From Pavona decussata (taxonomy: Eukaryota), in the NCBI GenBank assembly GCA_977016875.1, contig CDRNST010000047.1, forward strand, positions 1,240,001 to 1,304,000: a DNA stretch of 64,000 nt, given 5' to 3'. The position numbers and the translations under genes are program-made. Positions 6,679 to 63,179 of the stretch are shown piece after piece. Below the pieces are notes generated by a model, which saw only the letters and a list, made by a program, of their open reading frames with translations, was not told the origin of the DNA and made no database searches. Numbering within the stretch: the first letter of the stretch is position 1; each line of letters begins with the position of its first letter.

Positions 6679-6823
6679 NNNNNNNNNNNNNNNNNNNNNN
6701 NNNNNNNNNNNNNNNNNNNNNNNNNNNNNNNNNNNNNNNNNNNNNNNNNNNNNNNNNNNNNNNNNNNNNNNNNNNNNNNNNNNNNNNNNNNNNNNNNNNN
6801 NNNNNNNNNNNNNNNNNNNNNNN
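6679..6823. other. Assembly gap (145 N) in repeat-like sequence
   Basis: Run of N. The left flank has TTAAGGTGGCTC twice (~6528 and ~6617), resembling a transposon end. Confidence 0.95.
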
Positions 6824-9320
6824 ATCTCGTTTTTGAGTTATAACCACTTAAAGCTAAAATGATGGGTGTTTTTAACAGGTTGCACTATTGCTATGTTAAC
6901 CTTTGATGCCCAAAAACTGACCTTGACTATTTTACCAATGATTATAGGCACATCGTTGATACCTGTATTGTAGTATCAACTGATAAAGAGTGGTAACAAT
7001 GATCAAAGCGATTTTCAATTCGGCTCGCCCACTGTGATTCATCGGACAGTGAAACGTGTGTTAATGGCCCAGCACACTGACGAGATGGACTTCTTAGGGA
7101 CACTCGGCCCGACAGAAATCATTAAAGATTGAATGATTGGATAATGCGATTCCGGAGTTTTGATTGGATTAGCGGACATGATATATCAGCCATAATATAC
7201 CATGCGGTCATAAATCGCCTTGTGGTCTTTCTTGCAAGATGAAATCAGCAAGATTTAAACATATTTCCTAGTTGATTTTAATAAATCAAGTGTTCCACTT
7301 GCTCTTGTTGGATATCAATATATGGCATGATTATCTCGATTCTATGCATTTCGCCAAAATGCATCGGATGGATCTCTATCACCTCCGTATCTGAGTGCTC
7401 GCTCGTGGAATAATTGTTAACTAGGCTACATACAAGATTTCCGGGTCTCCGAAGGAAATCGGCTGAAACACTTTAACCAAATCATAAGAAGAAGAAGATA
7501 AAATATGCAAATGATCAAGGTTTGTTTTATGATCTAGTCACGTATGATACTCGCTTCTTGCGACTTTCTGACCGCCTAATGGACGCGATCAGCAGTCGGC
7601 ATTCGAAGTCACGATGACTAACCCCCATGGTTCACTACATCATAAATGAAACCAATGCAGTTGAAGAGATAAACGATAACATGTTCTATTATACAGCTAT
7701 GAAGAGTCCTGGAAGATCGCGATAGATGACCGTTAAAAAAAATACCGGCATTCGACTTCCTGATTTATTGGTATCGCTGGTGACTGTAAATCAAGTTGAG
7801 TGTTAAAAAGCTGCTCTAAATGCCGCTAAACTACAGAATATATGATCACAATAACCATCTACCAACGAGCTGCCTCTTTTCGCCAGATGGTCTCCTCCAT
7901 CCACTGCCGAGCGAAACAAACCGAAAAAGCATAAACCCCAAACTCACTAAATGCGTTATTCTTCGTTCAGTGTGGTCCATGCCCTTTTAAACTGGCCACC
8001 AAATACTATCGTCTATTATCTGAAAGTTGCTCAGTGAACCTTGGAACCTTTGTGTGCAGCTCGCTTGAATTTTAAAAGAAAAAATTCCAATTCAGCACGT
8101 ACCAAATAAACAACTAAAGAATACGTGGTTGTTCTTATTCATTGTGATGCGTCGGCCCACAAAAAAGCCAATAAAGGAGGTCACATTTACGAACACCTCA
8201 CCCTCTGACGTCAATTGTGTGTCCAATTGAGCCGGTTTCAAAAGATACCGCCATTACAAATTTCATTTCCTGCTAACCTACTTTGAAAGGAAGTGTTTTA
8301 TGTCTTTAGTGTGTACCTTTCATACGGTCTTGTCATCAAGACTATGTAGCAGTTTACACAAGAGGTAAACACGACGGTTCCTATGCTCCGTGACAAATAT
8401 GTCATAGTCAGGTTACCCCATGCGTTGTAACACAGATAGAAATTGAACTTGAAACAGCTAAATTGTAAAACAGACCCGACCCGTTAGAACAGCATTCCAA
8501 CGGGTCATCTTCTTTTGCCATTAATTTGCGGTGGCTGTTAAACTGATGCTGTCCGTAAAGACCGACAACAGTTTTCATTTTGCAAAGAGGTACAACGTTT
8601 GCTGATCAAACGTTTGCTAAATTTGGTGCGCATCATCCAGAATAAAAAAAAATCCAAATACAACAAAACACTTTATTTTATCGTGATATATATATTTTTT
8701 CAGTTTGATCACCATAGCATGTGCCTTCATATCAGAGCTCGATTTTAGGGTCCAGTTAGACCACATTCAGTAGGTCAAGTACAACCCAGTTCTTGCAGTT
8801 CCGCTGACCGACAGTCATAGTCTTAAAAATTTCATATCTTCTTTTCTCTTGATGGGTAATCTCTAGTATATTCCAAAAGCTGCTGAGCTAGATGTATTGA
8901 CTTAAGAGGGCATTTTACTTCAAGACCCTCTTTTATGTTCACAATAAAACCTGCTTATATATTGATCCAGTAGATACCCTGTTACACCTTTGCTCCGACT
9001 CAGACAGAGAAGGAGCTCTTCTGCAAACGGAGGCAACGTTTACACCGGCAGTTTATGTTGAGCAGGAATAGCCAAAGGTAATCTGGGAATTTCTTTCTTT
9101 TGACTAATTTGGGCTCTCTTGGGGTACAAGTCCTCTTAATTAAACATACCAGAGTTAAGTTTTATTCCAAGACGTCCTCAGTCAATGCAAAAAACTGCAC
9201 GAGCGCGGTACTCAATTGGTAATGAATGATCGATCACCTGGAGCAAGTTCTCATGTCAGACAAATGATCAACGTGTTACAGTTTGGAAAGTAACAGCCCC
9301 TTTTCAGTGCTGTCGGATTA

Positions 9321-16744: not shown

Positions 16745-17293
16745 GTGTGGTTCAAAAATCGCCGGGCGAAATGGCGAAAGAAGGAGAAGAACAACCCAAC
16801 CAACATACTTGGACAAGACAAGGGAGGAACAATTATTCCAAGCGTGAATGGATTTTACGAAAGCCCAAGCTCCATTCGCTATGAAAGCTCCGAGACACCG
16901 CCGTCGGTTTATCCCAACTACAGCACAAACTACTGGAGTAAAGGAGCTCCCAGCCTAGGCTACAGCTCACTACAGCAAGGAAGTAACAGTCTTGGGTATA
17001 ACTCGTTCAGCCAAATACCTCCACCGTGCCCTGTGCCACCGCAAATATCAGGAACTCTGAGTCCCTTTTCAACCCCAATCTCGAGCGATAACAGCTCGGT
17101 ATCATACCCGGCCAGTTCTTCCAGCGTTCCGAGTGTTCCTTGCGGTTATCCGCCAACTTATGGCTACCAAGAACAGAGCTCGGTGTATTTAAAAGGTAAA
17201 AGTTCTTCCATGAGTCACCATCCGAACTATTCGCAGCCGAATCCGTACAGCTCATATCCATACGGGATGGCCGAAATCCCAATTAATATTTAG
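16745..17293 (+). CDS. Pitx: Pitx coding exon 3 (helix 3 VWFKNRRAKWRKKE, K50, plus S/P/Y-rich C-terminus)
   Basis: ccctttag|GTG TGG TTC AAA AAT; open to TAG at 17291-17293. Confidence 0.95.
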   Translation: MWFKNRRAKWRKKEKNNPTNILGQDKGGTIIPSVNGFYESPSSIRYESSETPPSVYPNYSTNYWSKGAPSLGYSSLQQGSNSLGYNSFSQIPPPCPVPPQISGTLSPFSTPISSDNSSVSYPASSSSVPSVPCGYPPTYGYQEQSSVYLKGKSSSMSHHPNYSQPNPYSSYPYGMAEIPINI

Positions 17294-47527: not shown

Positions 47528-48313
47528 CCACACAACACGGCTTCACAAGGAGGGTCTCAATACGGGGATACTGAGCTAGCGGCAAGACTTCGTTGCACTT
47601 AAGTGTAGACGTTTGATGTTAAGTATGCTGCGGAGCTTACGTTGGTGAAAATGCCGTCCAGGATCTTAATGTGACGTCTATAGTAAGTTCAGAATTCACA
47701 CCCACATACAGAAGAGATGGAATAAAAATGGTTTTGTGGACTGAGTTATTTTTGTGCTTGGTCTAACATCGTAGCAGTTAAACACTCCTGGTTTCAAGAC
47801 GACCGAAGGCAGCAAACTCGTAAACACTCGTCATTTATTACTTTGTGGGGCTAGAGAAGATTGGATGCGAGAATGCTAGATCTATAAAATGCTGCGTAGA
47901 GCACTTGATTTTGCTCTCAACACTTCTCCTGAATTTGACAACAAAAATCATATCACAGTGCCACGCCCTGAACGGAATCCGCATTGGCTCTCTGGTAAGA
48001 TACACTCTTCAACTTGGTGACGAGACACTTAACGAGAATTTTGGCTAGAATCTTTCGGCCCTCTACAGAGAATAAGGGAATCACAGTATAAGTTGCAATC
48101 TCCCTTTCTTTTATAGATTACAAAATCGTGGCATCTTTAATCATATATTGAAGGCACTAGCCAAGAGACGGGGACGTTCATCAGAAATTTTGAAAGACAC
48201 TCCCAAAGGGTACCAGCATCACCTGTCGTCTTTCGTGTGCATAGCTCGAAAAAGAGGTTGTATGAATGTTTCTGAAGTTGATATTTCTTTTGGCTTCGAT
48301 TCATTACCTTAAA

Positions 48314-48325
48314 ATAATAATAATA

Positions 48326-48366
<41 letters not shown>
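48314..48366. repeat. (AAT)n microsatellite
   Basis: Direct observation. Confidence 0.95.
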
Positions 48367-48706
48367 CTCACTGTGGTTACCATAGGTTCACTGTTCAGTT
48401 TACAACGTCCATTCACTATTCTTCGGACACAGGTAAGATCGTAACAATTAGGATATTGTATTGTCATTGGCATGAAGCAACGAAATTATTTCCCTGGGAA
48501 GGGTGGTTGACATCTATATATCCAGTATCGAGGGGAGAGGGGTTGGGTGGACAATCGTCCGTTCGAGCCAGAAGATTGAACACCCTAAGCGGTACCTGAA
48601 CACCTGAAAAGACACGATGAGCGACCCCGTCACTTTTATCTTGGAGTCCCCTAGGGCAACTTACCCAATTACAAAAAGGCCAAAAGATGACCGCAACGTG
48701 GGAACT

Positions 48707-48955
48707 CTAATTCCGCAAGCGTCTTGCGTGCACTGGTTCTGTCGGCAAGTATTTGGGAATGAAAACAATTTAATCTTGCAAACAGGAGTAAATGCCTTAA
48801 AATAAACTGACTAAATGGCTGCTGATGGATGGTTGTCTGTAACAAGACCGCACAATAAATCGTCCCTTCCTTAAATATGTGCTGCTTCGAAGGATTTGTC
48901 TCTTTTTTTTTAATACCTTAATCCTGTCGTTCTCAAAACTAACTCTTGACAAGTG
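48707..48955 (+). promoter_or_regulatory. Conserved upstream module of Dmbx-B (copy 1 of 3)
   Basis: GAAAACAATTTA(48761)...TGACTAA...GCTGAT...CAATAAATC(48853)...TAATACCTTAATCC(48911-48924)...TTGACAA, in the same order as the copies at 51884 and 59071. Confidence 0.7.
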
Positions 48956-49580: not shown

Positions 49581-49710
49581 ATGGAGGCCAACCCGTTTTC
49601 TATTGAAAGCATCCTGAAGAATAGCTCTTCTTCAAATGTCGATGAGGAGAAAGAAAGTACTCCACCATCGAAATCCACTGAGGCGCTGTCACTAGCTGTG
49701 AAACTTGCTG
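49581..49710 (+). CDS. Dmbx: Dmbx-B exon 1 (MEANPFSIESILK...STEALSLAVKLA)
   Basis: eh1 motif FSIESIL, donor GCTG|GTAAGT; homologous to the exons at 37971 and 59870. Not in the ORF track. Confidence 0.85.
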
Positions 49711-51883
49711 GTAAGTTGTAGCTGATCGAGGTACCTCGTTATTTGAGAGGCGTAGTTTAGAAATAAAGTAAAATTTGCGTTTCCACGCTTTCGCTAATAA
49801 AACAATGATTCTTGGAACGAAGTGACATAACGATGAACGAGGGTCACTTTTCCTATCCTTAGACGGCCCGCATCTTAAGGTGGCTTGCAGAGCTTAAGAG
49901 CTTCAATGCACACTACAATTCTCATCAAACATGAACAGAATACGTTCTCTTAGCAGAGTACCACTCGTACTAAGGAACTTTATTAAGTTGCCAAAACGCA
50001 TAATTTCGGGTCAATCATGCCAGTAGTATTTCAGTACAAGCACTAACACGACAACCGCCTACCTGAGTCATTTTAAGAAGAGTAATGTGGAGATCAATTT
50101 AACAAGTACATTGCAAGTTTATTCTATTCTTTCACTGTTTACATCTCGTCGAACCGATCTAGTTAAAATAGCGTAAGTGATAGTAAAGCAGTCAGCCACG
50201 GAGTTAACGTAAACAAGATAACAAGGGGAGAAGAGGTTTTCTTTCCAGTTTGCTATGCTCAAATGTCTCTCGAAATAGCAGGCCCTAGTTTTAAACTTTT
50301 ATTTCGTTATTTACTTTTGACAAGGAAATCAAAATACCCCATTTCAGCACAGGTTTAAACACTTCTACTATCAGAAATTATTGATACAAAGGAAAAAACG
50401 AAGAGAAAAAAATGCTATATTGGGAAAATCTTGTCATTTACGTGACCTTTCACCAATCGTTACTTATCAAATAGCTAAAGGCTTTTCTGCCTGCCAAGCT
50501 GGCGCCAACGAAAGATACAAGATCTTGATAAAAATGTTACCCATACTAGTACTTCCAACAAAAAAGAACTGTTTTTGATAAGTAGCATTGTAAAGAGGAC
50601 AAACAAAAAATGGTCTATCACCTTATACACTGAATTCAACAAAATTGCTAAGAGTGGATTTTAAGTATTAAGATTAATTTACATTGCACTCATTCTTGGT
50701 AATCCACCCGTCAGGTATATTGCACGAAGTGTTGTTTTTATCATCTTTCTTATCAGTGGTTTACTGACCAAAATCCGTCTTTGACAAGTGTGTGACTATT
50801 GTATAAACAAAATTGTTTTTGTTGGGTTGCTTAATGTACCATTTATCCGTCCCTTATTAAAGCATTTTGTTCAAAAGGGTCGAACATCATCGATTTCAGC
50901 AGTATCCCTTGGGCTAAGCTGTCAATTCGGTGTTGACATTAACAGATAAATCACCTTGGTCAGCCTGAAGGGGCACCGAGGCCATACGATGCTGCTGGCC
51001 GCCCAAAATAGGGCCCAAACGTAATACCAAAGGAACAACAGTAACAGTGAAAAAGGCACCAAGAAACTCACCAATTGTGTCAGAGGGGGATCATTGATGA
51101 GCATTTCTCGGTAGACAGTCTGGCAATATGATAATCGTTCCTGTATTCCTAAGCATCAAGTGATAAATCATTAGTAATTAATAAATAACATTGAAAGTGA
51201 TACATATATTACGACTTTGAAATTGCGGATACTTTGGCTCTGAGATGAGGGCCCTGACGAAATGGATTGATAGTGTCTCTCAACCCGAAAACACTGATCA
51301 GAGCTGCTCATGTTCGGAGAAACATGGTCATACCAATCCTAGCTAAATTCACCAGAGAGGAAAATCAAAGTTCTGTTGCAGATCCGTGGCATTAATTGTA
51401 TAAATATGCCTCCATGTAGCGAAGAAAACTGAACAAACCGTTTAATAGTGCTCATATGAGACCTAGCAGGACATTTAATTATGGGTTGTTACGAGTTAGA
51501 AAGGGTCTTATACAGAAAGCTCAAGCCATTGTTGATTAGTGCGATTAGGAGGTAGCCTGGATGTGTTTTTTACTCTATGGCTAGCTGTTCAGTATAAAAT
51601 GTACCTACGTTTACTCTTTCATAAGTATTGTTTATTCGGTATTTTTTTTCTTTGTATCTATCGTAAGGGTGTATCTACTGTAAGCCCTAGTTTTAACAAT
51701 TGAATAAACTATTATCTATTATTATAAAGTAAAATTGGAATAATTTTGACAACAACAAACAAAGAAAATTACTGTTAGGTCACTCATTTTTCATGTTTGC
51801 TTTGTTTTAAGTTGTAAAAGTAAACCCACACATTGTTCTCGATTTATATCATTTTCAGCTACTGCTGCTGTTATGCGATAGCG

Positions 51884-52490
51884 AAATTCCAGGACTGGCT
51901 TCTTTCGATACGTTTTTCAAAATGAAAACAATTTATTCTTGCACGCGCGTGTAAATACCTTGAATTAAAATGACTAACTGTCGGCTGACAGATGAATGGC
52001 TTGCAATAAATCATAATTTCACGGAGGCGCGATGATGGAGGGAATTCCGGGAACTAATGCTTTAATCCTCCGACACTAGAAAAGCTTAGGAGAGATGTTA
52101 AGGCTAAAGCTTGATCCTTGACAAATCTCAGGGAAATGTTATCAAAAAGATTTAAACCCTTGATGGTTCTGATAATGAACTCAAAATATGTAGGAACCTT
52201 ATACACCAGAGCCGTGGATGTTGGCACAAAGGTTAGGTGTCTAACTGCTCGATACGCATTATCACAATCGCTGGCAGGATGGATGCTCGTCTTCCTTAAT
52301 GCATATTTCTAAAACCAAAAATGACAATGGTAAAAAACTCTTCGTGCTTTCCTACTTTGCCTTCCGAGAGGCATACAGTTGAGTGGTTAGGTAAAGGCAT
52401 TACATTAGATCAGGGATTTTGCGGTCGCGATTCTTGAGATTTTATAGAACGACTTTCATTATTTAGGCGGATATTTGTCAATGTCAGCTA
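51884..52490 (+). promoter_or_regulatory. Intronic relic copy of the Dmbx upstream/promoter region (copy 2 of 3)
   Basis: GAAAACAATTTA(51924), CAATAAATCATAA(52004), TAATGCTTTAATCC(52055-52068), TTGACAA, GTTAGGTGTCTAACTGCT(52232) and ATTTGTCAATGTCA(52473) are colinear with 59071-59718. Confidence 0.7.
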
Positions 52491-52688
52491 CGATTTGGCT
52501 TTGATTGGGTTTGCAGCTGCTAAACATGAAACTTGAGAGCTTTCTCGCAAGACTGAGCGGTGGTCTGCCACTCTAATTAGGTTAGTGTCTTGAACCATAA
52601 ACTGGTGGCTTGATACAGTTTAACCTTGACATTCGTACAGGCCGAAACTTTAGACTTTCCCTCCGATCAATCAACCCCCCAAAAGAGT

Positions 52689-52794
52689 TATTTATCTGTT
52701 TAGAGTAATTTTGTCCAAGAAACTACTGCATCAGAGCGAAGCGTTGTCAACTACAAGCGGAACTGAAACGCTTCCACCGTTAAACTAGTAGTAG
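52689..52794 (+). pseudogene. Degenerate (pseudo) Dmbx exon 1
   Basis: Reads LSV*S[+1]ILSKK...TETLP[-]VKLV, compared with FSIESILKK...TEALSLAVKLA. It lies ~765 bp after GAAAACAATTTA, versus 745-820 bp for the live exons. No ATG and no intact donor. Confidence 0.6.
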
Positions 52795-52818
52795 CTCTAA
52801 TGAAACCTATGGTGATTA

Positions 52819-52872
<54 letters not shown>

Positions 52873-52873
<1 letters not shown>

Positions 52874-53874
52874 TTCGTGATGCCGTGAGGCTTCGATATG
52901 ATTGGCCGATACCCGATAATCCGTCAATATGCGTTTGTGGGAGCATGTTTACAGTAGACCACGCGATGATCTGCCAGCGTGGAGGCTTAGTTATTCAGCG
53001 CTACAATGAAATACGCGATCTACAGGCCAAGTTGCTTGACATGGTTTGCTATGATATGCAAGTTGAACCGGCTTTACAACCTATTACAGGCGAAGAGCTT
53101 GCCAGAGGGACTAACCAAGCCCCTGACGCACGCCTTGGCGTCCACTGTAGGGGTTTCTGGGAGAGACAGAGAGCTGCATTTTTCAAAATAAGGGTGTGTC
53201 ATCCCAATGCGGACTCGTATAGAGATCTTAGCCCCAAGCAAATTTACAGGATTCATGAAAATGAAAAGAAGCGAAAATACAACTCTCGCGTCACAGAAAT
53301 AGAGCAAGGCACATTCACCCCACTGCACTGGTGTTTACAACGACGGGAGGGATGGCTGACGAATGCCTGAGATACCACTCAAGATTAGCCGATCTATTAT
53401 CTGCAAAAAAGCAAGAGAGTTACGCCACAACAATTTCATGGGTCAGGGCGAAAGTGCCCTTTGCATTTTTGCGGAACGCGCTCCTATGCCTAAGGCCTAA
53501 GGATCGAGAACCCCGAGAAGGAGGAACTTAGACGTTAAGGACAGGGATCTAGAAATAAAGAAGGGCCAAGCAAGACTTCGCTAGACTGCTATAGATACTT
53601 TATTATGGGTTGATTTATAGAGGCTTCTGAATTTTTCTCATTTTAGTGTATGATTGGTCACATGAATGACTTTTGTTCTTTTTTTAAATTTAATATTATT
53701 GTTTTTTTTAATATTGTGCTTGAAAATAGCTCTGTTGTGCTTCGAGATACTCTTTTTTTAATCACAATTGAATTGTAAATAGTTTTTTTACTAATCTTTT
53801 TTCTACTTTTAACTTGTGGATATCGATTTTCCTTGGAATATTTTAATAAAGTTTTAATATTAAAATAAAAAAAA
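52873..53874 (+). mobile_element. 5'-truncated non-LTR retrotransposon with restriction-like endonuclease (CRE-like), inserted in (ATT)n
   Basis: ORFs 52885-53370 and 53331-53531 (frameshift): CVCG.....DHAMIC zinc knuckle, [41 protein letters not shown]. 3' AATAAA and A-rich tail; (ATT)n on both sides (52819-52871 and 53892-54046). Confidence 0.85.
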
Positions 53875-53989
53875 TGATTATAATTACTATAATTATTATT
53901 ATTATTATTATTATTATCACTCAGGTTTTAATAGAATCAAACTGTATCTAGTAGATTTTATTGTTGTAAATAATAGAGTTATCATTCCA

Positions 53990-54048
<59 letters not shown>

Positions 54049-54518
54049 GACAATGCCCGGCCCAGTTGCTTTAACTGAATGCTAAAATGTACAGTGGTTA
54101 CTGCAATGATGCATGGAGAAACCATAAAAATGACCTTTTCCTTTCAATTATTTTTTCGGAATAGACCAAAAATTAAACGTCAGCTGATTATGTCAACAAA
54201 CGCTGAAAAAATTAAACTAAAAGTTCCCGAATGGGTGATTATTAACGAGGTTCCAAGATGAACAAAATTATTATAGTTACACGTCGCTTTAGTAAAAGGC
54301 TCTTTTTATAACGGTCTCATCCCCTTAACTTTCCCATTTTACACCAAGGAATTATTGCTTCCACTATTGGTACGATGTTATTTGAGATGAATATGAACGA
54401 AAAAAGTATCGTAAAAGAAAATAGAATTTTTCCGACAGGGAGATTGAGAAAGCATTCGCTCCATCAAAAGACATACATAAGTTACGCAGAAGTTTATCAA
54501 ACTTTGATTCTCTTTTAG

Positions 54519-54697
54519 ATGTTATCCTGGAAGCTCGACAAGAGAAAAATCGCCGTCCCCCAAGGCGCACGCGCACAGCCTTCACGCACCAACAACTGGG
54601 AATACTGGAAAAATCCTTCAGCAAAACGCATTACCCGGATGTAGAGCTTAGAGAGCAGCTTGCTGCAAAGACCAACCTACAAGAAGGCAGAATTCAG
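54519..54697 (+). CDS. Dmbx: Dmbx-B exon 2 ([60 protein letters not shown])
   Basis: tcttttag| acceptor, CAG|GTAAAG donor; Dmbx DxILEAR motif and homeodomain. Confidence 0.92.
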
Positions 54698-54906: not shown

Positions 54907-55245
54907 GTTTGGTTTAAAAACAGACGTGCAAAATATCGTAAGGAGGCAAAACGATATTTCTCCCCAGAGAGTTATGAAAGTGAAGATGAAGACATTTCTG
55001 TCGCCTGTCACATGACACAGACCCAAGAGCCCTCATCCTATTTTCAGTGTAATACAGCAATGCCGTACTGCTGCAACTATATTGATCCTATGGATTCAGC
55101 AAGACATATTGGATTTCCCTCAGACATATACACACAGTTTTCTGCATATGCACCATTGGCACATGCCAATGGGTATCGCACATTCTCATATGCTAATAAT
55201 CGGATTATGGATCATGCGCATTTGGGGAATATATGGGGCCGGTAA
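54907..55245 (+). CDS. Dmbx: Dmbx-B exon 3 (VWFKNRRAKYRKE... to GR*)
   Basis: ttttag|GTT TGG TTT AAA AAC, in frame with track ORF 55012-55245. Confidence 0.9.
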   Translation, partial: VWFKNRRAKYRKEAKRYFSPESYESEDEDISVACHMTQTQEPSSYFQCNTAMPYCCNYIDPMDSARHIGFPSDIYTQFSAYAPLAHANGYRTFSYANNRIMDHAHLGNIWGR

Positions 55246-56379
55246 TACGGAGGGAAAGAACACTCATTAAAGTGGCTCTCCATTTTGCAGCGCGAACGAT
55301 GTGTGTTTTCGAAACAGTGGCGGATTGAAGCTCCCGAAATCGTAAGGGCCTCCGCCAGACTTCCCAGGATATCAGTACCTACTATGTGAGATTTTCTTAG
55401 GGCTCCTTAATTCACCCTTGCTTCCAATGCTTATGATATGAGACAATCGTCGGACATTATGGAACGAACCCCTAAACGGTACCAGCTAGCGTCGCAGAAC
55501 ACCCTCGCACAATGAACGAGACATTAATCTGTTAAATAACTTTCAAGAAAAAGCGAGACAAGGGAATTCGTTGAAGGGAAGGCGTGCCGGATGTTATAAA
55601 TATATATATATTTCGATACAGTACAAGTTTCCCAACGTATCGTTTCGGAACGAGTTATGCAACCTAAGAAATTGGTCCTGCGAAGGAGGTATCGGCTGCT
55701 TTACATAGCTTTTATCTCGAGATGAATTTAGGGCATTTTTCTGCATAACTTTAAACGTTTTATCTGTTTAGAAGGTCTTACTGGCCACTGGATTTGCTAT
55801 GGTAAAAACTAAAAGGCCGCCTTAACAAAATGCAGCGGCCGCTGGAAGAATCGACACGACGGACCATTACACGTAAATTGCTAATAAAGTCTGTTATTGA
55901 ATTCATACTACTACTGAAGGCTCTCACATCTTTGACTCGTTCTGCCGAGTAAAAGATGGGACTCGTTTTGACTCGTGTTATGTTGTGCTCTATAGCCGTT
56001 TAAATTTGTAAACCAGTGGTAGACATCTTAATATCGGAGAAATAAATTTTAAGAAAAGTACAAACAGGAGATAGGGCTTGACTTATATTCACTGTGTTAG
56101 CATTCTCAGTTCTTTCCGGGACATTCACCAATGTCGAGTAGAATGATACTGATTGTCTTTTCACCCGGAAATTGCATATAACTTTTTCATACATGAGAAC
56201 TGCTAAAATAAAGCCCTGCACTTGAAAAGAGCAAATACAAACAGCAAATCGCTCCCACAGTGATTGTAATCCATTCTCTGTTAGTAGCATTCTGAAGAAG
56301 AAGTCTTTCCCACTTAACGAGGACACTGGAGAATCGTAAATCTCCCATTCCAACTCCCACACTTTGTCAGTTGCCTTCT

Positions 56380-56493
56380 TAGCCTACGTGTAGCCGTACC
56401 TACCCCACCCCCATGGAAAAACAGGAGGAGGGAACGGAAGGGTTCAGTGCTCACGCTTTTCCTCGGAGGATGGGTACAGCTACACGTAGGCTA
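56380..56493. mobile_element. Small TA-flanked MITE
   Basis: TAGCCTACGTGTAGCCGTACC ... GGTACAGCTACACGTAGGCTA terminal inverted repeats. Confidence 0.75.
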
Positions 56494-59070
56494 ACTTGTA
56501 CCTTTACCTTCTTAGACTCCCTTTTTACCATTCTTTTATAATTGAATCTCACTGAACAACCTTTCCGGTTAATACCATGAATCACTATAATTCATAGTCT
56601 CATTTGTTAAGTGTCTCATAAAGAACTTCTCTTGTAAGCAACTGCCTTTCCTATTCCTGAGAGTGGTCTTTCACTGACGAATTAGTGATTCACTTGAAAT
56701 TTGCATAAACGATAGAATATTACACTCCTGCTGGCATGTTACCTCCTAAAAACCATTGGAAGACATAGTTCGCCCAAAGCCTAAACCATCTTGATCAAGG
56801 CAATCTTCAAACAGAGAAACACAATACCTGAAAATTATACCATTTGCATTTTGACTGAGATTTAACACATATTTGGAAGATCGACTTTGGGATTTACACA
56901 AAGGATACACTGTAAAGAGTGTAGTGTCCTGGGAACTGTCAATGCCCAAGGCAGACAGATCAGTAGAAGGCGTTTTCTTGATCAGCAGCTACAGCCCTAG
57001 CCGCCGGGCACAAGCTACCAACAAAATCACGAGTTACCAATAAGAGACCCAAGATGGTTCTTTGCTGAGAATGGTGTCAGCCACTGTTAGGGGAACGTTT
57101 ACTTAATACAAGCAACAGAACAAGAAAGGCGAAAAGGAGTGAAGAGGTTTATTTGGATAACATTGAGTAGTCAGTGCGGATAAAAAAACACTATCGAGCG
57201 AGTTAGACCAAACTAGTAGCTCAATTGGCTAATTGGATTAAATAAAAGGATCTTGTGCCTTGTATTACACTCCACGCTACTGTGGTCTAATCAGATTACT
57301 TATCACCTAAATTCTTTCCTGTTTTAAATTCACGGCGCGGGCACCGGAAACCGATAAAGAACCCAAGTTCTACCAAACCGGGCAGCTTCATCATAGCCTT
57401 TTTTGGTGAATTATTAGAGCACGCTCAAGTTCAAAAACCAACATTTCCATTTCCAACAAGCTCAAAATTAAACACTTCCAAATTCCAGTTCTATCTGGAT
57501 TATTGTCAAGCACTTCATCATGAACCTCTTGCTCAGGAGATTGTGCAAGCACTCCCCATGTTATTCACATTAAAAAAACAAAAAAACAAAACACTTTACT
57601 TTACTTTAGCACAGAGAATCAGATTGCTTCCAGTAGGTGAGAGATATTCAGTTTCATTTTTAACAGTTTTGTAGTTCAGGTATTTCTTGCTGAGAATTAA
57701 TTAATGGAAGGAGAACGTCATCTTCTTGTCACATGTAGACCTTGTCGCCAAATACTGCATGGTACGTGACGTTGCTTTTGTATCTAGAATAAAGTATATA
57801 CTATGTGTAGACATATTTTTATAACGAACAATTATAGTGTTACCAGGTTGTTTTGGAACAGAGCCCTGTGTCTAATTGGGATGTGATAAGTTTGTCAAGG
57901 ATAAAGGAGAAAGTTTTAGGGAGAAAAGATATCTACAGAAAAAATTGTAAGGATTAGGGATAATTAACTTAATTTTAGGGTAACTCTAACCCTAATCTTA
58001 AGGATAGCAGACTTTCAATTTTAGGAGTTAGGAGTAACTATGCTAAAAATTACCCCCTTGGACACACTAATTTATGTCAGGCAGCACCTTCTGGAACTTC
58101 ACCCTTCAATAAATGGCTCTGTATATATATGTCTCAAAACAGTCCTGGTTTCTAGTTTTAAACGCCGAAGTGTCATCTATGACCTATGGTTCCCTTGCTA
58201 TTTATACTTTCACTGTGTGTGTGATTTAACCCATTCACAAATTGCAGTCTGCAAAGATGTGATGTGTGAAATCCTGAATGGGTAAAACTTCCTGCAATAG
58301 GGGTAAATGGACATGTAATATGCGGAACGTCAGTTAATTAATCATTCACAATGAATGAATTGAAAATTGATACACAAAATCAAACTGTTTTTACAGATCT
58401 TGTGATTAACTCAGTGTATTCACATACATGACTTTTAGTTAAAATACGTATGATATAGTAATATGATCAAGCACTATCATTCCAAACATTGGAAGGAAAA
58501 TATTTTTAGACTGGACGGCCCAAATGGGTCACCCGAAAGCAGTTCTCAGTTGTGATCAAGGCTTCTTCCTACTTGTATGTTCCGTATGTAGTGAAAATCT
58601 GGTTTTCCCCAAAGGCTTTGTGTCTTGAACAAATTGCAATCTATTTTCTCCCATTCCAGGTTTGAAAGATTTATTAGACAACTCGTTAAAATGTGATCGG
58701 AAAGCAACGACAACCGAGTCATAACATGAACTAGTGACCGTACCACGCAAAAGCACTGTTTAAGTCATTCACTTCTTTTTAAGTATTCTAACTATGTTGT
58801 AAGAAAATAAGATTCGAGGGAAACCGTCAATAAATATTATTGTAATATAACCTTAACATAGGCAATACCGACGTGCCCATTGTTACAAGGGCAATTAAAA
58901 GACGTATTTCGTTCATAGGTGGTTACAGCGAAGATCAAATGAACACTGTTTGTAATCTGTTACTTGGAGCTTATAACGGATGAACCGGTCAGTGTAAAAT
59001 TGTAACTGAAACCCTGGATTATTTCTTCATTTATCAACTGATGCGCGATAAACATCGGCGAGTAATGAAG

Positions 59071-59869: not shown

Positions 59870-60002
59870 ATGGATACGAATCCATTTTCAATTGAAAGCA
59901 TTCTGAAAAAGAATACTCCTTCGCCCTCGCTCGAAGACAACACAGAGGAAACGCAACCATCGACATCAACTGAAGCACTGAGTCTGGCGGTGAAACTAGC
60001 TG
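59870..60002 (+). CDS. Dmbx: Dmbx-C exon 1 (MDTNPFSIESILKK...STEALSLAVKLA)
   Basis: eh1 plus Dmbx motif; donor GCTG|GTAAGT, phase 1. Confidence 0.88.
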
Positions 60003-61471
60003 GTAAGTCTGTCAGTTATGTTAAACAAGGAATATCTCCAATAAACCACTCAGATTAAGTGTGTAACAGTGCAATAGTTTCTTGGCAGTGTGAAATGACC
60101 ACGTCTTAAACCATTTCAAAGTGTTTAAACATGTTTAATAGAAAAAGGCACTGCTGTTCAGAGAAAATCTAACATCACAATCTAACGAATAAGCTACAAC
60201 TTAGCATCTCTGCTGGGGAAGCAGCATGGCTTTGTCAAAGATCGATAATCTAAGTCTAAACAGATTTTGTTTTTCTATAACAAAGTACTTTATTTCAATT
60301 CGAGTGTCTAAATTGTTTTAAAATCAGTGGAACAGTTTCCCCGATGAACTTTCGATAGTTCTGGGCCCTAGAAAGATAACTGAGAGATTTAATTATTTAA
60401 TTTGTTCGTAATCTTTGTCAAAACCATTTTAACCGTAACTTAGATCCTCCACTGATTTGGGATGGACTGAATAACTACAATGAAGCTCACGGTTTTCGCG
60501 TTAATCCTGTTATCTTCCTGTCCCTTGGGGAAAAAGAAACGGACATTGCAAATTATTATAAACTTCCAACGAGCTAAAATATGAAGTTGCGATGTCAATT
60601 GCAAAAGACAGATGTGGTATAACTCTTAGGCTCACTTTGTAATTGTAAGTAAAGACGTTTATATGGACTACACCTGGAGATGTTATAAACTGCATGAATG
60701 CAATGGCTATGACTGCATTTTAAAAAGGTATCTGTAGTTGATTATTGTTTGGATTAAAAACGATGAAACCTTATCGATCAATTCAACCAAGTGGTACTTC
60801 TTGATTAAATGCGGAGAGTTTATGTAAACAAGTTAACAAGGAGAGGATGGGTTAATGTACAATTCAGAAGATAAACTATCTAAAACAGTTTAGTACATTA
60901 TATGTCTCTTTCTGTTGGAGCCTCTCAAACTTAAAAACAGCAAATCCTAAATAAACTGAGGATAGGGGTTTTCTAAGGAATGTCTTTAGAGATTGTAGCT
61001 CGAATGTCTATCATCTGGTGTATGGATACAACCCCAAGGGAAATTCCATTCTAAGTACTCTAGGCTGTATAGTATTGAAGGCATTAAAAAACGTAGCCTG
61101 AACGCCATGCACTTGGTAAAAAGTGACTAAAAAGATAGTAGTAAGCAGACGTTGGCTCCTTTTTAATTTAACGCATAACACATGCCGCACGCTTATGTTT
61201 ATCTGGCAGCTTATCAGAATTAGATACATTTCCCTGAACAATCTGGCGCCAGCAAAGTCTGGAAAATGATGATAAAGAAGGAAACGATTTCAAGAGCTTT
61301 AACTTATCTCTACTGCCAGTCCCTCTAAGTAACTCCAGAGGGCAAACGTTCACAGTTTTCCAACTCACGTTCTCAACTCAACGTGGTAATCAGGCACCAT
61401 AATAAGGACCCCTTACCAACTTCTGTAAACTTAGAAGGCAGCAAAAGTAATTAAATTTATGTGGGCATAAA

Positions 61472-61861: not shown

Positions 61862-63179
61862 TTGAATCTCTAAAGACTAGTGTAATTCATTGACTGAGAA
61901 GGTACAGGAAAGTTCCAACAGCGTTTAGTTTAAAATCATTGAACTTTAAACTTTCAAACACAAAAGCTATTGTGGTCTCTGTGCGTTAAACGGTTACAGT
62001 ACAGGAAACTGGGATTATATCAACGGCTGTTAATATTTATTCAAGCTTACTCTTTTAAATCTAGTTTCAAACTTTAGGTAATCCTCCTGGTAATGTTCAG
62101 ATACAGACGTTTAAGGGACAATTATTCACGATGCAAACCTATCATCGACAGCGACGAAAATCAAAGATAAAGTCAGTTCCCCGTCATAAGGACTCTCGAG
62201 GTGTTTTAGAAAATCAATAAAAATATTACCTTGACGAACTAAAGCGACTGAATCACGAAACAAATTTTTATTTCAAAATGAGAGCGAGAGGTTGTAACAT
62301 CCTCAGATAATTGCTCAGTACTGCTCTCTCGACTATTAACTAGGTTGATTAGTGAAATTACTCTACAAGAATTACATTATGTCAAGAACAGTCACTGTGG
62401 AAGACATTGTTCAATCCAGTAAAACAGGTGGAGGCCGCCGCCTTTTCTGTGCGCCCTGCTTTTGAGGATTCGCCGCAGGCGAGGTTATTTTGTACGTACA
62501 AGGGAAGCTCTTGGGACTGAACAAGACCGTACAAATAGTTTGATGTATTCGTGGCGATGATATCGAATGAATATTGTTGGAGACCAATTTTGATCTTGGT
62601 GCTGTTTCGTGGAATCTGCATCAGCTGATAAAACTGCATTTTTTTATATCCAAGTTTCCTAAGCATGTCACGCAAAAGCCACGCCTTTCTTTGAAGAACA
62701 CTTCAGAAAGACTAAAACTAGTACTGTGTTCACACTTGCACCAAATAGTTTACTCTGGTTTTGCTATAATTTGTGTTCATACTGAGGAGTCCTGGACGCT
62801 AAAACAGGTTCGCAACGAGGTTCTTTGACTATGATCGTGTGCTCTAGTGTAAACCATATGAGATCGGTTGAGTGTGGACTTTGATGCATGCAACCAGTCG
62901 GTGAAATGATCAATGGTGCGTCGAGGAAAGAATGAGTCAACTTTTTATGCTTTCAAGGGTGCCCTTCCTTTCTATCAATAATGGTAATGATAATAACAAT
63001 AATAGTAATGATACTCATGATGATGATGATAACACTAATAATGACAATGATAGTCTCTCAACAACTGGGCAGCAAAGATATTTCCTTGACTTAAATACAG
63101 CTTAAATTAGTTGCACTGGTTCTAAATGATTAGATGGCTACAACAACAAAATCAACAACAACAGTTAAACTACTACTAC

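What the first reader, a model, noticed from the sequence alone, without database searches (positions are those of the whole stretch)
51884..52794. Fossil fourth Dmbx 5' unit (promoter plus dead exon 1) hidden in intron 1 of Dmbx-B; Dmbx-B may be chimeric
Seen: a colinear copy of the Dmbx upstream blocks at 51924, 52004, 52063, 52232 and 52473. At the expected distance follows a decayed exon: tta tct gtt TAG agt a att ttg tcc aag aaa ... act gaa acg ctt cca cc gtt aaa cta g (FSIESILKK...TEAL..AVKL-like), with a stop, frameshifts, no ATG and no donor. Several blocks match Dmbx-C better than Dmbx-B, e.g. GTTAGGTGTCTAACTGCT vs C GTTAAGGTGTCTAATTGCT, and CAATAAATCATAA shared with C. The array therefore has four exon-1 units but three homeobox exons. 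Inference: exons 2-3 at 54519 may originally have belonged to the fossil unit and been captured by the 49581 exon 1. The fossil's motif blocks look better preserved than its coding exon, which would fit retention as an intronic enhancer.
Basis: partly seen in the sequence, partly recalled or inferred. Interest (0 to 1): 0.75.

Follow-up and report, generated by a model that had tools for sequence, protein, structure and literature searches.

The report
Duplicated promoter module inside Dmbx intron
Inside the first intron of a coral Dmbx homeobox gene lies a second, unused "front end" of the gene; its regulatory half sits at the same spot in six other coral loci and is as conserved as coding exons, so it is probably a working intronic enhancer, while its first exon is all but erased.

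Summary
The colinear blocks are real, at the stated coordinates, far above chance, and not a dispersed repeat: the block-1 signature occurs exactly three times in the 602 Mb genome (units B, F, C). The unit reaches further 5' than reported, with a C-type upstream element at 51122-51219.

The "dead exon" is only marginal (p about 0.007 against C after correcting for choice of coordinates). A profile search does not detect it, and it evolves neutrally.

Transcript contigs from two studies join 49710 to 54519 (GT..AG) and skip the unit.

Six B loci from other coral assemblies or metagenomes have the same layout: unit, exon 1, intron element, upstream element, F blocks, exon 2. F forms one orthologous clade.

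Against a congener, F's blocks 1-4 plus the upstream element diverge 2.8%, against 7.7% for neutral flanks (p 3e-5) and 2.3% for exons. The regulatory half is therefore a conserved intronic module, not a fossil.

Whether Dmbx-B is chimeric cannot be decided, because the B/F/C branching order is unresolved.

It is dead here and in the congener but intact in two other genera. A fourth gene lies beyond the window.

The scan had not noted this on other DNA.

The parts
51122..51219 (+). upC(F): copy of the TAATTAATCAT-rich upstream element that also lies about 790 bp upstream of C's block 1. Not found upstream of unit B.
   Evidence: Profile from C orthologues hits here (E 0.003) and at the matching place in L008 (E 3e-7). 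5-sequence profile E 2.5e-11. No hit upstream of B. 98.0% identical to the congener against about 92% for neutral sequence.
51888..51995 (+). F block 1 (GAAAACAATTTA ... TGACTAA ... GCTGA core)
   Evidence: Profile E 1e-26.
52004..52016 (+). F block 2 (CAATAAATCATAA, identical in C)
52055..52070 (+). F block 3, containing TTAATCC (K50-homeodomain-type site)
52113..52132 (+). F block 3b (GATCCTTGACAAATCTCAGG), 20/20 identical in the L008 orthologue
52231..52251 (+). F block 4 (GGTGTCTAA core). Present in 5 of the 7 F units (no exact core found in L019 or L021) and in every C unit. Absent from B units.
   Evidence: (96% to L008).
52465..52525 (+). Degenerate core-promoter blocks 5-6. The TTTATCA motif is mutated to TTTGTCA and TAATT to TGATT.
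   Evidence: In B the matching blocks end 12 bp before the first transcribed base seen (49458). Divergence from the congener is 4.9%, not distinguishable from neutral.
52686..52797 (+). Putative vestige of first exon 1b. Support is marginal.
   Evidence: 8.0% divergence from the congener, equal to neutral. Not alignable to the L008 counterpart.
52815..54047 (+). Lineage-specific insertion of a high-copy retroelement fragment, bounded by (ATT)n runs (52815-52871 and 53989-54047), with an ORF at 52885-53370.
   Evidence: At least 1349 candidate copies at 84-93% identity. Absent from the congener L014 (1228-base gap). No Pfam family.
49581..49710 (+). Dmbx-B exon 1 (live distal first exon), donor GT at 49711
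   Evidence: Transcript contigs X1 and X2. Profile E 6e-39.
50170..50268 (+). intCNE: conserved intron-1 element (GTAAACAAG.TAACAAGG core). Follows exon 1 of B and of C in several species. No copy follows F.
   Evidence: 98% identical to the congener.
54519..54697 (+). Dmbx-B exon 2 (homeodomain N-terminal part)
   Evidence: Joint 49709/10 to 54518/19, GT..AG. Pfam Homeodomain E 3e-14.
54907..55245 (+). Dmbx-B exon 3 (WFKNRRAKYRK ... stop)
56262..56385 (+). G: second orphan first-exon relic. It has an in-frame TAA and no ATG or donor. It is orthologous to an intact first exon in L017 and L018.
   Evidence: z about 5; E 4e-8.

Best explanation
The stretch is the proximal 5' unit of Dmbx-B. It is an old duplicate of the promoter-plus-first-exon cassette shared by the B/C-type Dmbx genes, and it lies in intron 1 about 0.8 kb (without the later retroelement) upstream of exon 2.

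Its anatomy runs from 51122 to about 52800: a C-type upstream element (upC), blocks 1-4, a degenerate core promoter (blocks 5-6), and at most a vestige of a first exon.

Shown:
- It is unique in the genome apart from its two live paralogues.
- The gene's transcripts start at the distal unit and splice 49710 to 54519 over it.
- The same unit sits at the same place in six B loci from other corals and forms one orthologous clade.
- Its distal half (upC plus blocks 1-4) evolves as slowly as coding exons, while the core-promoter remnant and exon vestige evolve neutrally.

Inferred: the promoter and exon functions died before the sampled corals diverged. The distal half was kept by selection as an intronic cis-regulatory module. 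It is most likely an enhancer (a 'shadow' of B's own upstream module, with the same motif blocks including a TAATCC K50-homeodomain site) acting on Dmbx-B and perhaps its neighbours.
For: Paralogy and significance.

Uniqueness.

Splicing over the unit. Contigs of runs X1 and X2, from two studies, join 49709 to 54518 with GT..AG ends and continue into exon 3, and neither run has a contig on 51884-52800. P0038, a 215-aa product on a 1010-nt JGI contig (shorter than the about 3-kb intron, so spliced) of the L008-type coral, joins exon 1 directly to exon 2.

Positional conservation: L008, L014, L017, L018, L019, L021. All have intCNE, upC, F block 1, then exon 2.

Orthology: F clade support 86/92, with root-to-tip lengths 0.16-0.34 against 0.31-0.32 for B and 0.22-0.30 for C.

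Constraint against the congener: blocks 1-4 plus upC 13/466 = 2.8%, against 7.7% neutral (p 2.8e-5) and 2.3% for exons. The exon vestige is 8.0% (p 0.86) and blocks 5-6 are 4.9% (not significant).

L008's F block 1 is 82-88% identical to B and C block 1 across species.

No structured-RNA signal: no Rfam match near any gathering score, and fold z +0.75.
Against: There are no chromatin, reporter or TSS data, so enhancer activity is inferred from conservation alone.

Block 5 of F is still a perfect consensus in the congener L014 and near-perfect in L019. Residual promoter activity in some species or life stages is therefore not excluded.

In the window's genus the F module sits on a long stem (0.19). 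The window's block 1 has 15-21 lineage-unique changes against 2-4 in L008, which hints at partial relaxation. C's block 1 in this genome is similarly accelerated.

Metatranscriptome contigs (X7, X8) cover 51789-52112. The origin of that signal is unclear.

The other coral loci are unnamed assemblies. How many independent lineages they represent is judged only from sequence divergence.
Confidence: 0.7

Rival explanations
1. Two neighbouring genes were fused by a deletion running from intron 1 of the upstream gene to the flank of the downstream one. Exons 2-3 at 54519 originally belonged to the F unit and were captured by the 49581 exon 1, and the redundant F exon and promoter then decayed. This concerns origin and is compatible with F now being an enhancer.
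For: F shares the upC element and block 4 with C, and B has neither. F is therefore not simply a copy of B's own unit.

B's exon 1 is followed by its own intCNE, as in a complete gene, while F has none and lies only about 0.4-0.8 kb from exon 2.

There is a precedent in the same array. In L017 the intact G first exon has no homeobox exons of its own between it and the next gene's unit (C), and in L018 none before the locus ends just past it.
Against: The tree cannot place F with C or with B (support 42/3; AU p 0.39-0.46).

All seven B loci already have the nested layout. No sampled coral keeps two separate genes or a live F exon.

The model needs a second event to remove F's intron with its intCNE.

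The exon vestige, on which 'a former gene' rests, is only marginally detectable.
Confidence: 0.3
2. Two-tier ancestor with complementary loss. The common ancestor of B and C already had two alternative promoter-plus-first-exon units: a distal one, and a proximal one carrying upC and block 4. The whole gene duplicated in tandem. B kept the distal first exon and lost the proximal one (F). C kept the proximal one and, in the window's genus, lost the distal one (G), which is still intact in other genera.
For: The same nested layout appears twice in the array.
- B unit, exon 1, intCNE, upC, F unit, exon 2.
- G unit, exon 1, (intCNE in L019 at 7551-7599, E 3e-6), upC, C unit, exon 1, intCNE, exon 2.

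G's exon is intact with ATG, eh1 motif and GT donor in L017 and L018, and dead in the window and L014.

upC and block 4 mark both proximal units and neither distal unit, which costs one change instead of two on this model.
Against: G is the most divergent unit. Its exon scores equally against B-type and C-type profiles, and its module only slightly favours B (24/22 bits against 21/13). B's exon 1 is closer to C's than to G's.

No transcript or protein shows G joined to C's exon 2. The exhaustive search found none.

No species has a live F exon.
Confidence: 0.35
3. F is still a working alternative promoter of Dmbx-B. It would be used at stages or in tissues not sampled, producing a transcript with a non-coding first exon.
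For: Block 5 (TATA-like ATTTATCAATGTCA) is perfect in L014 and has 1-2 mismatches in the window, L018 and L019. Metatranscriptome contigs lie on 51789-52112.
Against: No contig of X1 or X2 lies on 51884-52800, and there is no joint from this region into exon 2.

Block 5 is lost in L008 and L017.

The region where a transcription start and first exon would lie evolves neutrally (6.9-8.0%).

There is no GT donor at the aligned exon end, and exon 2 has no in-frame ATG, by direct reading. The X7/X8 contigs lie upstream of any expected start.
Confidence: 0.12
4. Chance resemblance, or a dispersed repeat or transposon fragment.
For: A true high-copy retroelement fragment abuts the unit at 52815-54047.
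Against: E 2e-14 and z 17.6 against shuffles. The signature occurs exactly three times in 602 Mb, with none in the reversed-pattern control. There are orthologous copies in six other coral loci.
Confidence: 0.01

Closest known systems
Promoter-to-enhancer repurposing (Carelli et al. 2018, Nat Commun, PMC6172195)
   Same: An element of promoter ancestry has lost its promoter and first-exon role, yet is retained under constraint as a non-promoter regulatory element.
   Different: Here the ex-promoter is a duplicated copy nested in the intron of a tandem homeobox gene in corals. The evidence is sequence conservation only, with no epigenomic data.
Shadow enhancers (redundant second copies of a regulatory module within one locus; my own knowledge, Hong, Hendrix and Levine 2008)
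   Same: F repeats the motif blocks of B's own upstream module (blocks 1, 2, 3, 3b) a few kb away within the same gene.
   Different: Classical shadow enhancers share binding-site content but usually not alignable sequence. F is an alignable paralogue with a clear duplication origin, and overlapping activity has not been tested.
Partitioning of alternative promoters and first exons between duplicated genes (for example teleost mitfa/mitfb; my own knowledge, Altschmied et al. 2002)
   Same: B keeps the distal first exon and has lost the proximal one. In this genus C keeps the proximal one and has lost the distal one (G).
   Different: The duplicates are tandem, not from whole-genome duplication. 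It has not been shown that the ancestor used both first exons, and the tree does not resolve the required grouping.
Variable-first-exon loci (UGT1A, clustered protocadherins; my own knowledge)
   Same: There are several promoter-plus-first-exon cassettes in series upstream of shared downstream exons. Each first exon ends with a donor in the same phase.
   Different: There are only two cassettes per gene, and one of them is dead.
Hybrid genes from deletions between tandem paralogues (for example haemoglobin Lepore; my own knowledge)
   Different: Lepore-type fusions arise by homologous unequal crossing-over within aligned exons or introns and leave one promoter. Here two complete 5' cassettes remain in series, and fusion is not demonstrated.
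Linked, independently duplicated Dmbx genes in cnidarians (six DMBX homeodomains in Nematostella, PMC1779571; tightly linked duplicated Dmbx1 in Acropora millepora, cited in PMC6214176)
   Same: A tandem Dmbx array in an anthozoan.
   Different: In the Dmbx passages I read, those papers report gene counts and linkage. I saw no mention of nested or orphan 5' units or conserved intronic modules there.

Membership tests
Conserved non-coding regulatory element (enhancer-type) | Evolves more slowly than neighbouring neutral sequence | tested here: met
   Blocks 1-4 plus upC diverge 2.8% against 7.7% neutral, p 2.8e-5, with exons at 2.3%. Root-to-tip lengths are no longer than those of the live modules.
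Conserved non-coding regulatory element (enhancer-type) | Same position relative to the gene in other species | tested here: met
   It lies between intCNE and exon 2 of the B gene in L008, L014, L017, L018, L019 and L021.
Conserved non-coding regulatory element (enhancer-type) | Open chromatin or enhancer activity in vivo | not testable with these tools
   No ATAC, ChIP or reporter data are available.
Alternative promoter with first exon | Transcripts that start there and splice to exon 2 | tested here: not met
   No contig or joint from 51884-52800 in X1 or X2. The only joint into 54519 comes from 49710. Only a few runs, held as contigs, were examined.
Alternative promoter with first exon | Intact start codon, open frame and GT donor | tested here: not met
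   By direct reading of 52686-52797. A profile HMM finds no exon. The same holds in the six other loci.
Gene-fragment pseudogene (orphan dead exon) | Significant similarity to the parent exon | tested here: inconclusive
   p about 0.007 against C and 0.16 against B after correction. Undetected by profile. Not alignable to its L008 counterpart.
Gene-fragment pseudogene (orphan dead exon) | Neutral evolution | tested here: met
   8.0% divergence against 7.7% neutral, p 0.86. This holds for the exon vestige only, not for the module.
Dispersed repeat / transposable element | Many copies at unrelated places in the genome | tested here: not met
   Only F itself and B are found. The pattern occurs 3 times in 602 Mb. 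By contrast, the neighbouring 52872-53988 has at least 1349 candidate copies.
Dmbx family (paired-like homeobox) | Homeodomain with lysine at position 50 | tested here: met
   Pfam Homeodomain E 3e-14 on exon 2. WFKNRR at the start of exon 3 read directly.
Dmbx family (paired-like homeobox) | Groups with bilaterian Dmbx in a homeodomain phylogeny | not tested
   Indirect only. NCBI names the full-length relatives P0039 (Desmophyllum pertusum) and P0041 (Montipora foliosa) as diencephalon/mesencephalon homeobox proteins.
Structured non-coding RNA gene hosted in the intron | Match to a known family, or excess folding stability | tested here: not met
   Best Rfam hits are 19 and 17 bits against gathering scores of 37 and 95. 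Fold z-score +0.75.

The most novel reading that the evidence does not exclude
The B/C-type coral Dmbx genes descend from a gene with two alternative promoter-plus-first-exon cassettes. After tandem duplication the copies lost complementary cassettes: B lost the proximal one (F), and C lost the distal one (G) in some genera only. Each dead cassette's distal module was retained as an enhancer. This would be a lineage-by-lineage, still ongoing case of subfunctionalisation by promoter partitioning, readable directly in the DNA of living corals.
Probability: 0.35. Interest if true: 0.6.

Novelty: new member of a known kind. Interest (0 to 1): 0.45.

Why it matters
This gives a concrete, testable intronic regulatory element for a developmental homeobox gene in reef-building corals, where very few enhancers are known. 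Its ancestry is unusually clear: it is a duplicated promoter whose exon died while its regulatory blocks stayed under exon-level constraint across several coral lineages.

The array also carries a partner relic (G) that is dead in one genus and alive in others. Together they offer a natural series for studying how tandem duplicates divide promoters, first exons and enhancers between them. The elements defined here (upC, blocks 1-4, intCNE) are short enough for reporter assays.

Tried and rejected
1. Detecting the dead exon by tblastn, stringent local alignment, semi-global alignment with free end gaps (uninformative) and a profile HMM. All were negative. Only a global alignment at the expected place gives a marginal signal.
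2. Aligning the window's exon vestige with L008's. No similarity (z -0.2). An eh1-like PFTIEIIF stretch in L008 is not significant (E 0.31).
3. Intron-to-intron comparison of B, C and A inside the window. Only one shared element was found, the intCNE.
4. The Stylophora pistillata hit P0003 (C-type exon 3). Its contig is not retrievable.
5. Resolving the B/F/C/G branching order with a 250-bp tree and AU tests. Unresolved. Profile scoring of G against B, F and C types is not decisive.
6. An exhaustive protein search with the live G first exon, to see what it is joined to. Only three short exon-1 ORFs were found and no full-length protein.
7. The structured-RNA reading of the conserved module. 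Rejected.
8. The dispersed-repeat reading. Rejected.
9. Pfam on the retroelement ORF and on exon 3. No family.

Exons were searched one at a time by reference, and the joined-model step was left out. The N run at 6679-6823 was left untouched.

Full report
**Setting.** The window is G000:C47:1240001-1304000 of a 602 Mb stony-coral assembly. It holds three intact paired-like K50 homeobox genes with a 3-exon plan.
- A: 37971 / 42000 / 44206.
- B: 49581-49710 / 54519-54697 / 54907-55245.
- C: 59870-60003 / 63844- / 64790-, which runs off the window.
- A fourth gene (D) lies about 25 kb beyond C.

Pfam finds a homeodomain in exon 2. NCBI names full-length relatives in Desmophyllum pertusum and Montipora foliosa 'diencephalon/mesencephalon homeobox'. 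Linked duplicated Dmbx genes are already known in anthozoans (PMC1779571, PMC6214176).

- Block 1 aligns to B at 76% over 101 bp (E 2e-14) and to C at 67% over 185 bp (E 3e-7).
- Whole-unit scores exceed dinucleotide shuffles by z 17.6 (F-C) and 5.8 (F-B).
- Spacing from block 1 is almost the same in F (+80, +138, +312, +549) and C (+92, +148, +328, +554). This colinearity holds although the spacers themselves cannot be aligned.
- The refuting case of a dispersed repeat fails. The 917-bp stretch hits only itself and B genome-wide. A pattern of the positions invariant in B, F and C occurs exactly three times in 602 Mb, with none for the reversed control.
- By contrast, the adjacent 52872-53988 is a retroelement fragment with at least 1349 candidate copies.

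**The dead exon is weak.**
- tblastn and stringent local alignment do not find it.
- After allowing the best of all 112-bp windows within the expected 256 bp, 2 of 300 control regions do as well against C (p about 0.007), and 16% do as well against B.
- A profile HMM from five live exon-1 sequences finds A (E 1e-9), D (0.009) and a new relic at 56262 (4e-8). It finds nothing at F, even when only 587 bp are searched.

So a first-exon vestige is plausible from position but not demonstrated.

**Transcripts.** Contigs from runs X1 and X2 (same organism label, two studies) join 49709/10 to 54518/19 with GT..AG ends. They continue into exon 3, and the 5' UTR reaches at least 49458. The unit is intronic and skipped. 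No X1 or X2 contig lies on 51884-52800. These are assembled contigs, so rare isoforms cannot be excluded.

**Other corals.** The block-1 pattern pulled three coral-metagenome contigs. A word search with C's exon-1 ORF found 32 exon-1 ORFs, several on megabase contigs, from which I fetched five more loci.

I annotated them with profiles built here for exon 1, block 1, the upstream element upC and the intron element intCNE. All six B loci (L008, L014, L017, L018, L019, L021) show the same order: B unit and exon 1 (cut off the 5' end of L019), intCNE, upC, F block 1 (with block 4 in four of the six loci), exon 2, exon 3. None has a detectable exon at F. P0038, a 215-aa product on a 1010-nt JGI contig (shorter than the about 3-kb intron, so spliced) of the L008-type coral, joins exon 1 straight to exon 2. 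The unit and its disuse therefore predate the divergence of all sampled corals. The retroelement at 52815-54047 is absent from the congener L014, so it is a recent insertion.

**Constraint.** A 250-bp tree of 20 modules gives clades B (100/99), C (100/98), F (86/92) and G (100/99). F's root-to-tip lengths (0.16-0.34) are no longer than B's (about 0.31) or C's (0.22-0.30). L008's F block 1 is 82-88% identical to B and C block 1 of other species.

Divergence from the congener L014:

| Region | Divergence | Against neutral |
|---|---|---|
| Introns and flanks (neutral pool) | 338/4398 = 7.7% | reference |
| B exons 1-3 | 2.3% | p 3.3e-8 |
| F blocks 1-4 plus upC | 13/466 = 2.8% | p 2.8e-5 |
| F blocks 5-6 | 4.9% | not significant |
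| F exon vestige | 8.0% | p 0.86 |

The distal half is thus under purifying selection at exon level, while the promoter-proximal half is neutral. In the window's lineage, block 1 has more unique changes than in L008 (15-21 against 2-4). C's block 1 in this genome is similarly accelerated. No RNA family or excess folding explains the conservation.

**What it most likely is.** It is an ex-promoter cassette whose distal module is kept as an intronic cis-regulatory element of Dmbx-B, most simply an enhancer that shadows B's own upstream module. The paralogy, the skipping, the positional conservation and the constraint are shown. The enhancer activity is inferred.

**Origin.** F is C-like in two characters that B lacks: the upC element and block 4. 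It fits equally an insertion of a C-type cassette into B's intron, or an older two-tier gene.

The third option gains weight from the second relic, G (56262-56385). G is dead in the window and in L014. In L017 and L018 it is intact, with an ATG, an eh1 motif and a GT donor. In L017 it is followed not by homeobox exons of its own but by C's upC/block 1/block 4 unit. L019 keeps an intCNE copy in that interval. The nested layout therefore occurs twice, with opposite cassettes dead in this genus.

However, the B/F/C order is unresolved (AU p 0.39-0.46). G is equally close to B and C. No protein or transcript shows what G splices to. I therefore leave 'B is chimeric' as undecided.

**Verdict.**
- The 'retained as intronic enhancer' inference is strongly reinforced.
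- The chimeric-gene inference is unresolved.
- The kind of thing (duplicated promoter repurposed as an enhancer, orphan first exons in a tandem array) is known. This instance, and its conservation across corals, is new.

Noticed in passing
window 56262-56385; L017:16470-16604; L018:19196-19330; L014:15741-15862: A second orphan first exon ('G') lies 1 kb after Dmbx-B's stop codon. In the window and its congener it is dead (in-frame TAA, no ATG, no donor). In two other coral genera it is intact, with its own block 1 and block 5. In L017 it is followed directly by C's upstream unit, with no homeobox exons of its own.
   Followed up: partly
beyond the window: about 89.9-92.3 kb in window-relative coordinates (L005/L007, G000:C47:1329900-1332300): A fourth intact Dmbx-like gene (D) on the same strand, with a short intron 1 (about 1.2 kb). 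None of the B/F/C upstream blocks are present.
   Followed up: partly
window 50170-50268 and 60787-60883: A conserved intron-1 element with a forkhead-like GTAAACAAG.TAACAAGG core. It is shared by B and C and by their orthologues in five other loci, and is 98% identical to the congener.
   Followed up: partly
window 58241-58397 and 51122-51219: A homeodomain-site-rich upstream element (TAATTAATCAT ... TAATTAATAAAT). It is present upstream of the C and F units in all species examined and not upstream of B.
   Followed up: partly
window 51689-52112 (runs X7, X8): Two coral metatranscriptome runs from one study have contigs, about 94-97% identical to the window, on F's distal module. Both show a back-joint from 52112 through 'TAA' to 51689. 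The same runs keep intron 2 of B and lack B exon 1. This could be DNA carry-over from a relative, enhancer RNA or a rearrangement.
   Followed up: no
window 55169 (Dmbx-B exon 3): Transcript contigs of X1 and X2 carry a 15-nt in-frame insertion relative to the assembly. This is probably an allelic or strain difference.
   Followed up: no
window 52815-54047: A retroelement fragment with a 161-aa ORF and no Pfam family, bounded by (ATT)n runs. There are at least 1349 candidate copies in the genome, it is transcribed in X1 and X2, and it is absent from the congener. Similar (ATT)n/(AAT)n runs lie at 48310-48367 and 62977-63052.
   Followed up: partly
window about 16745-16789: Another homeobox third-helix coding piece (WFKNRRAKWRKKEK) lies upstream of the Dmbx array, so a further homeobox gene sits in the same window.
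   Followed up: no
window 48815-48832 and orthologues: The 3' end of block 1 reads TGATGGATGG in B, a Pbx-Hox-type bipartite site by my recollection. It reads TGATAGAT in C and in L008's F copy, and TGACAGATGA in the window's F. The site differs between paralogous modules.
   Followed up: no
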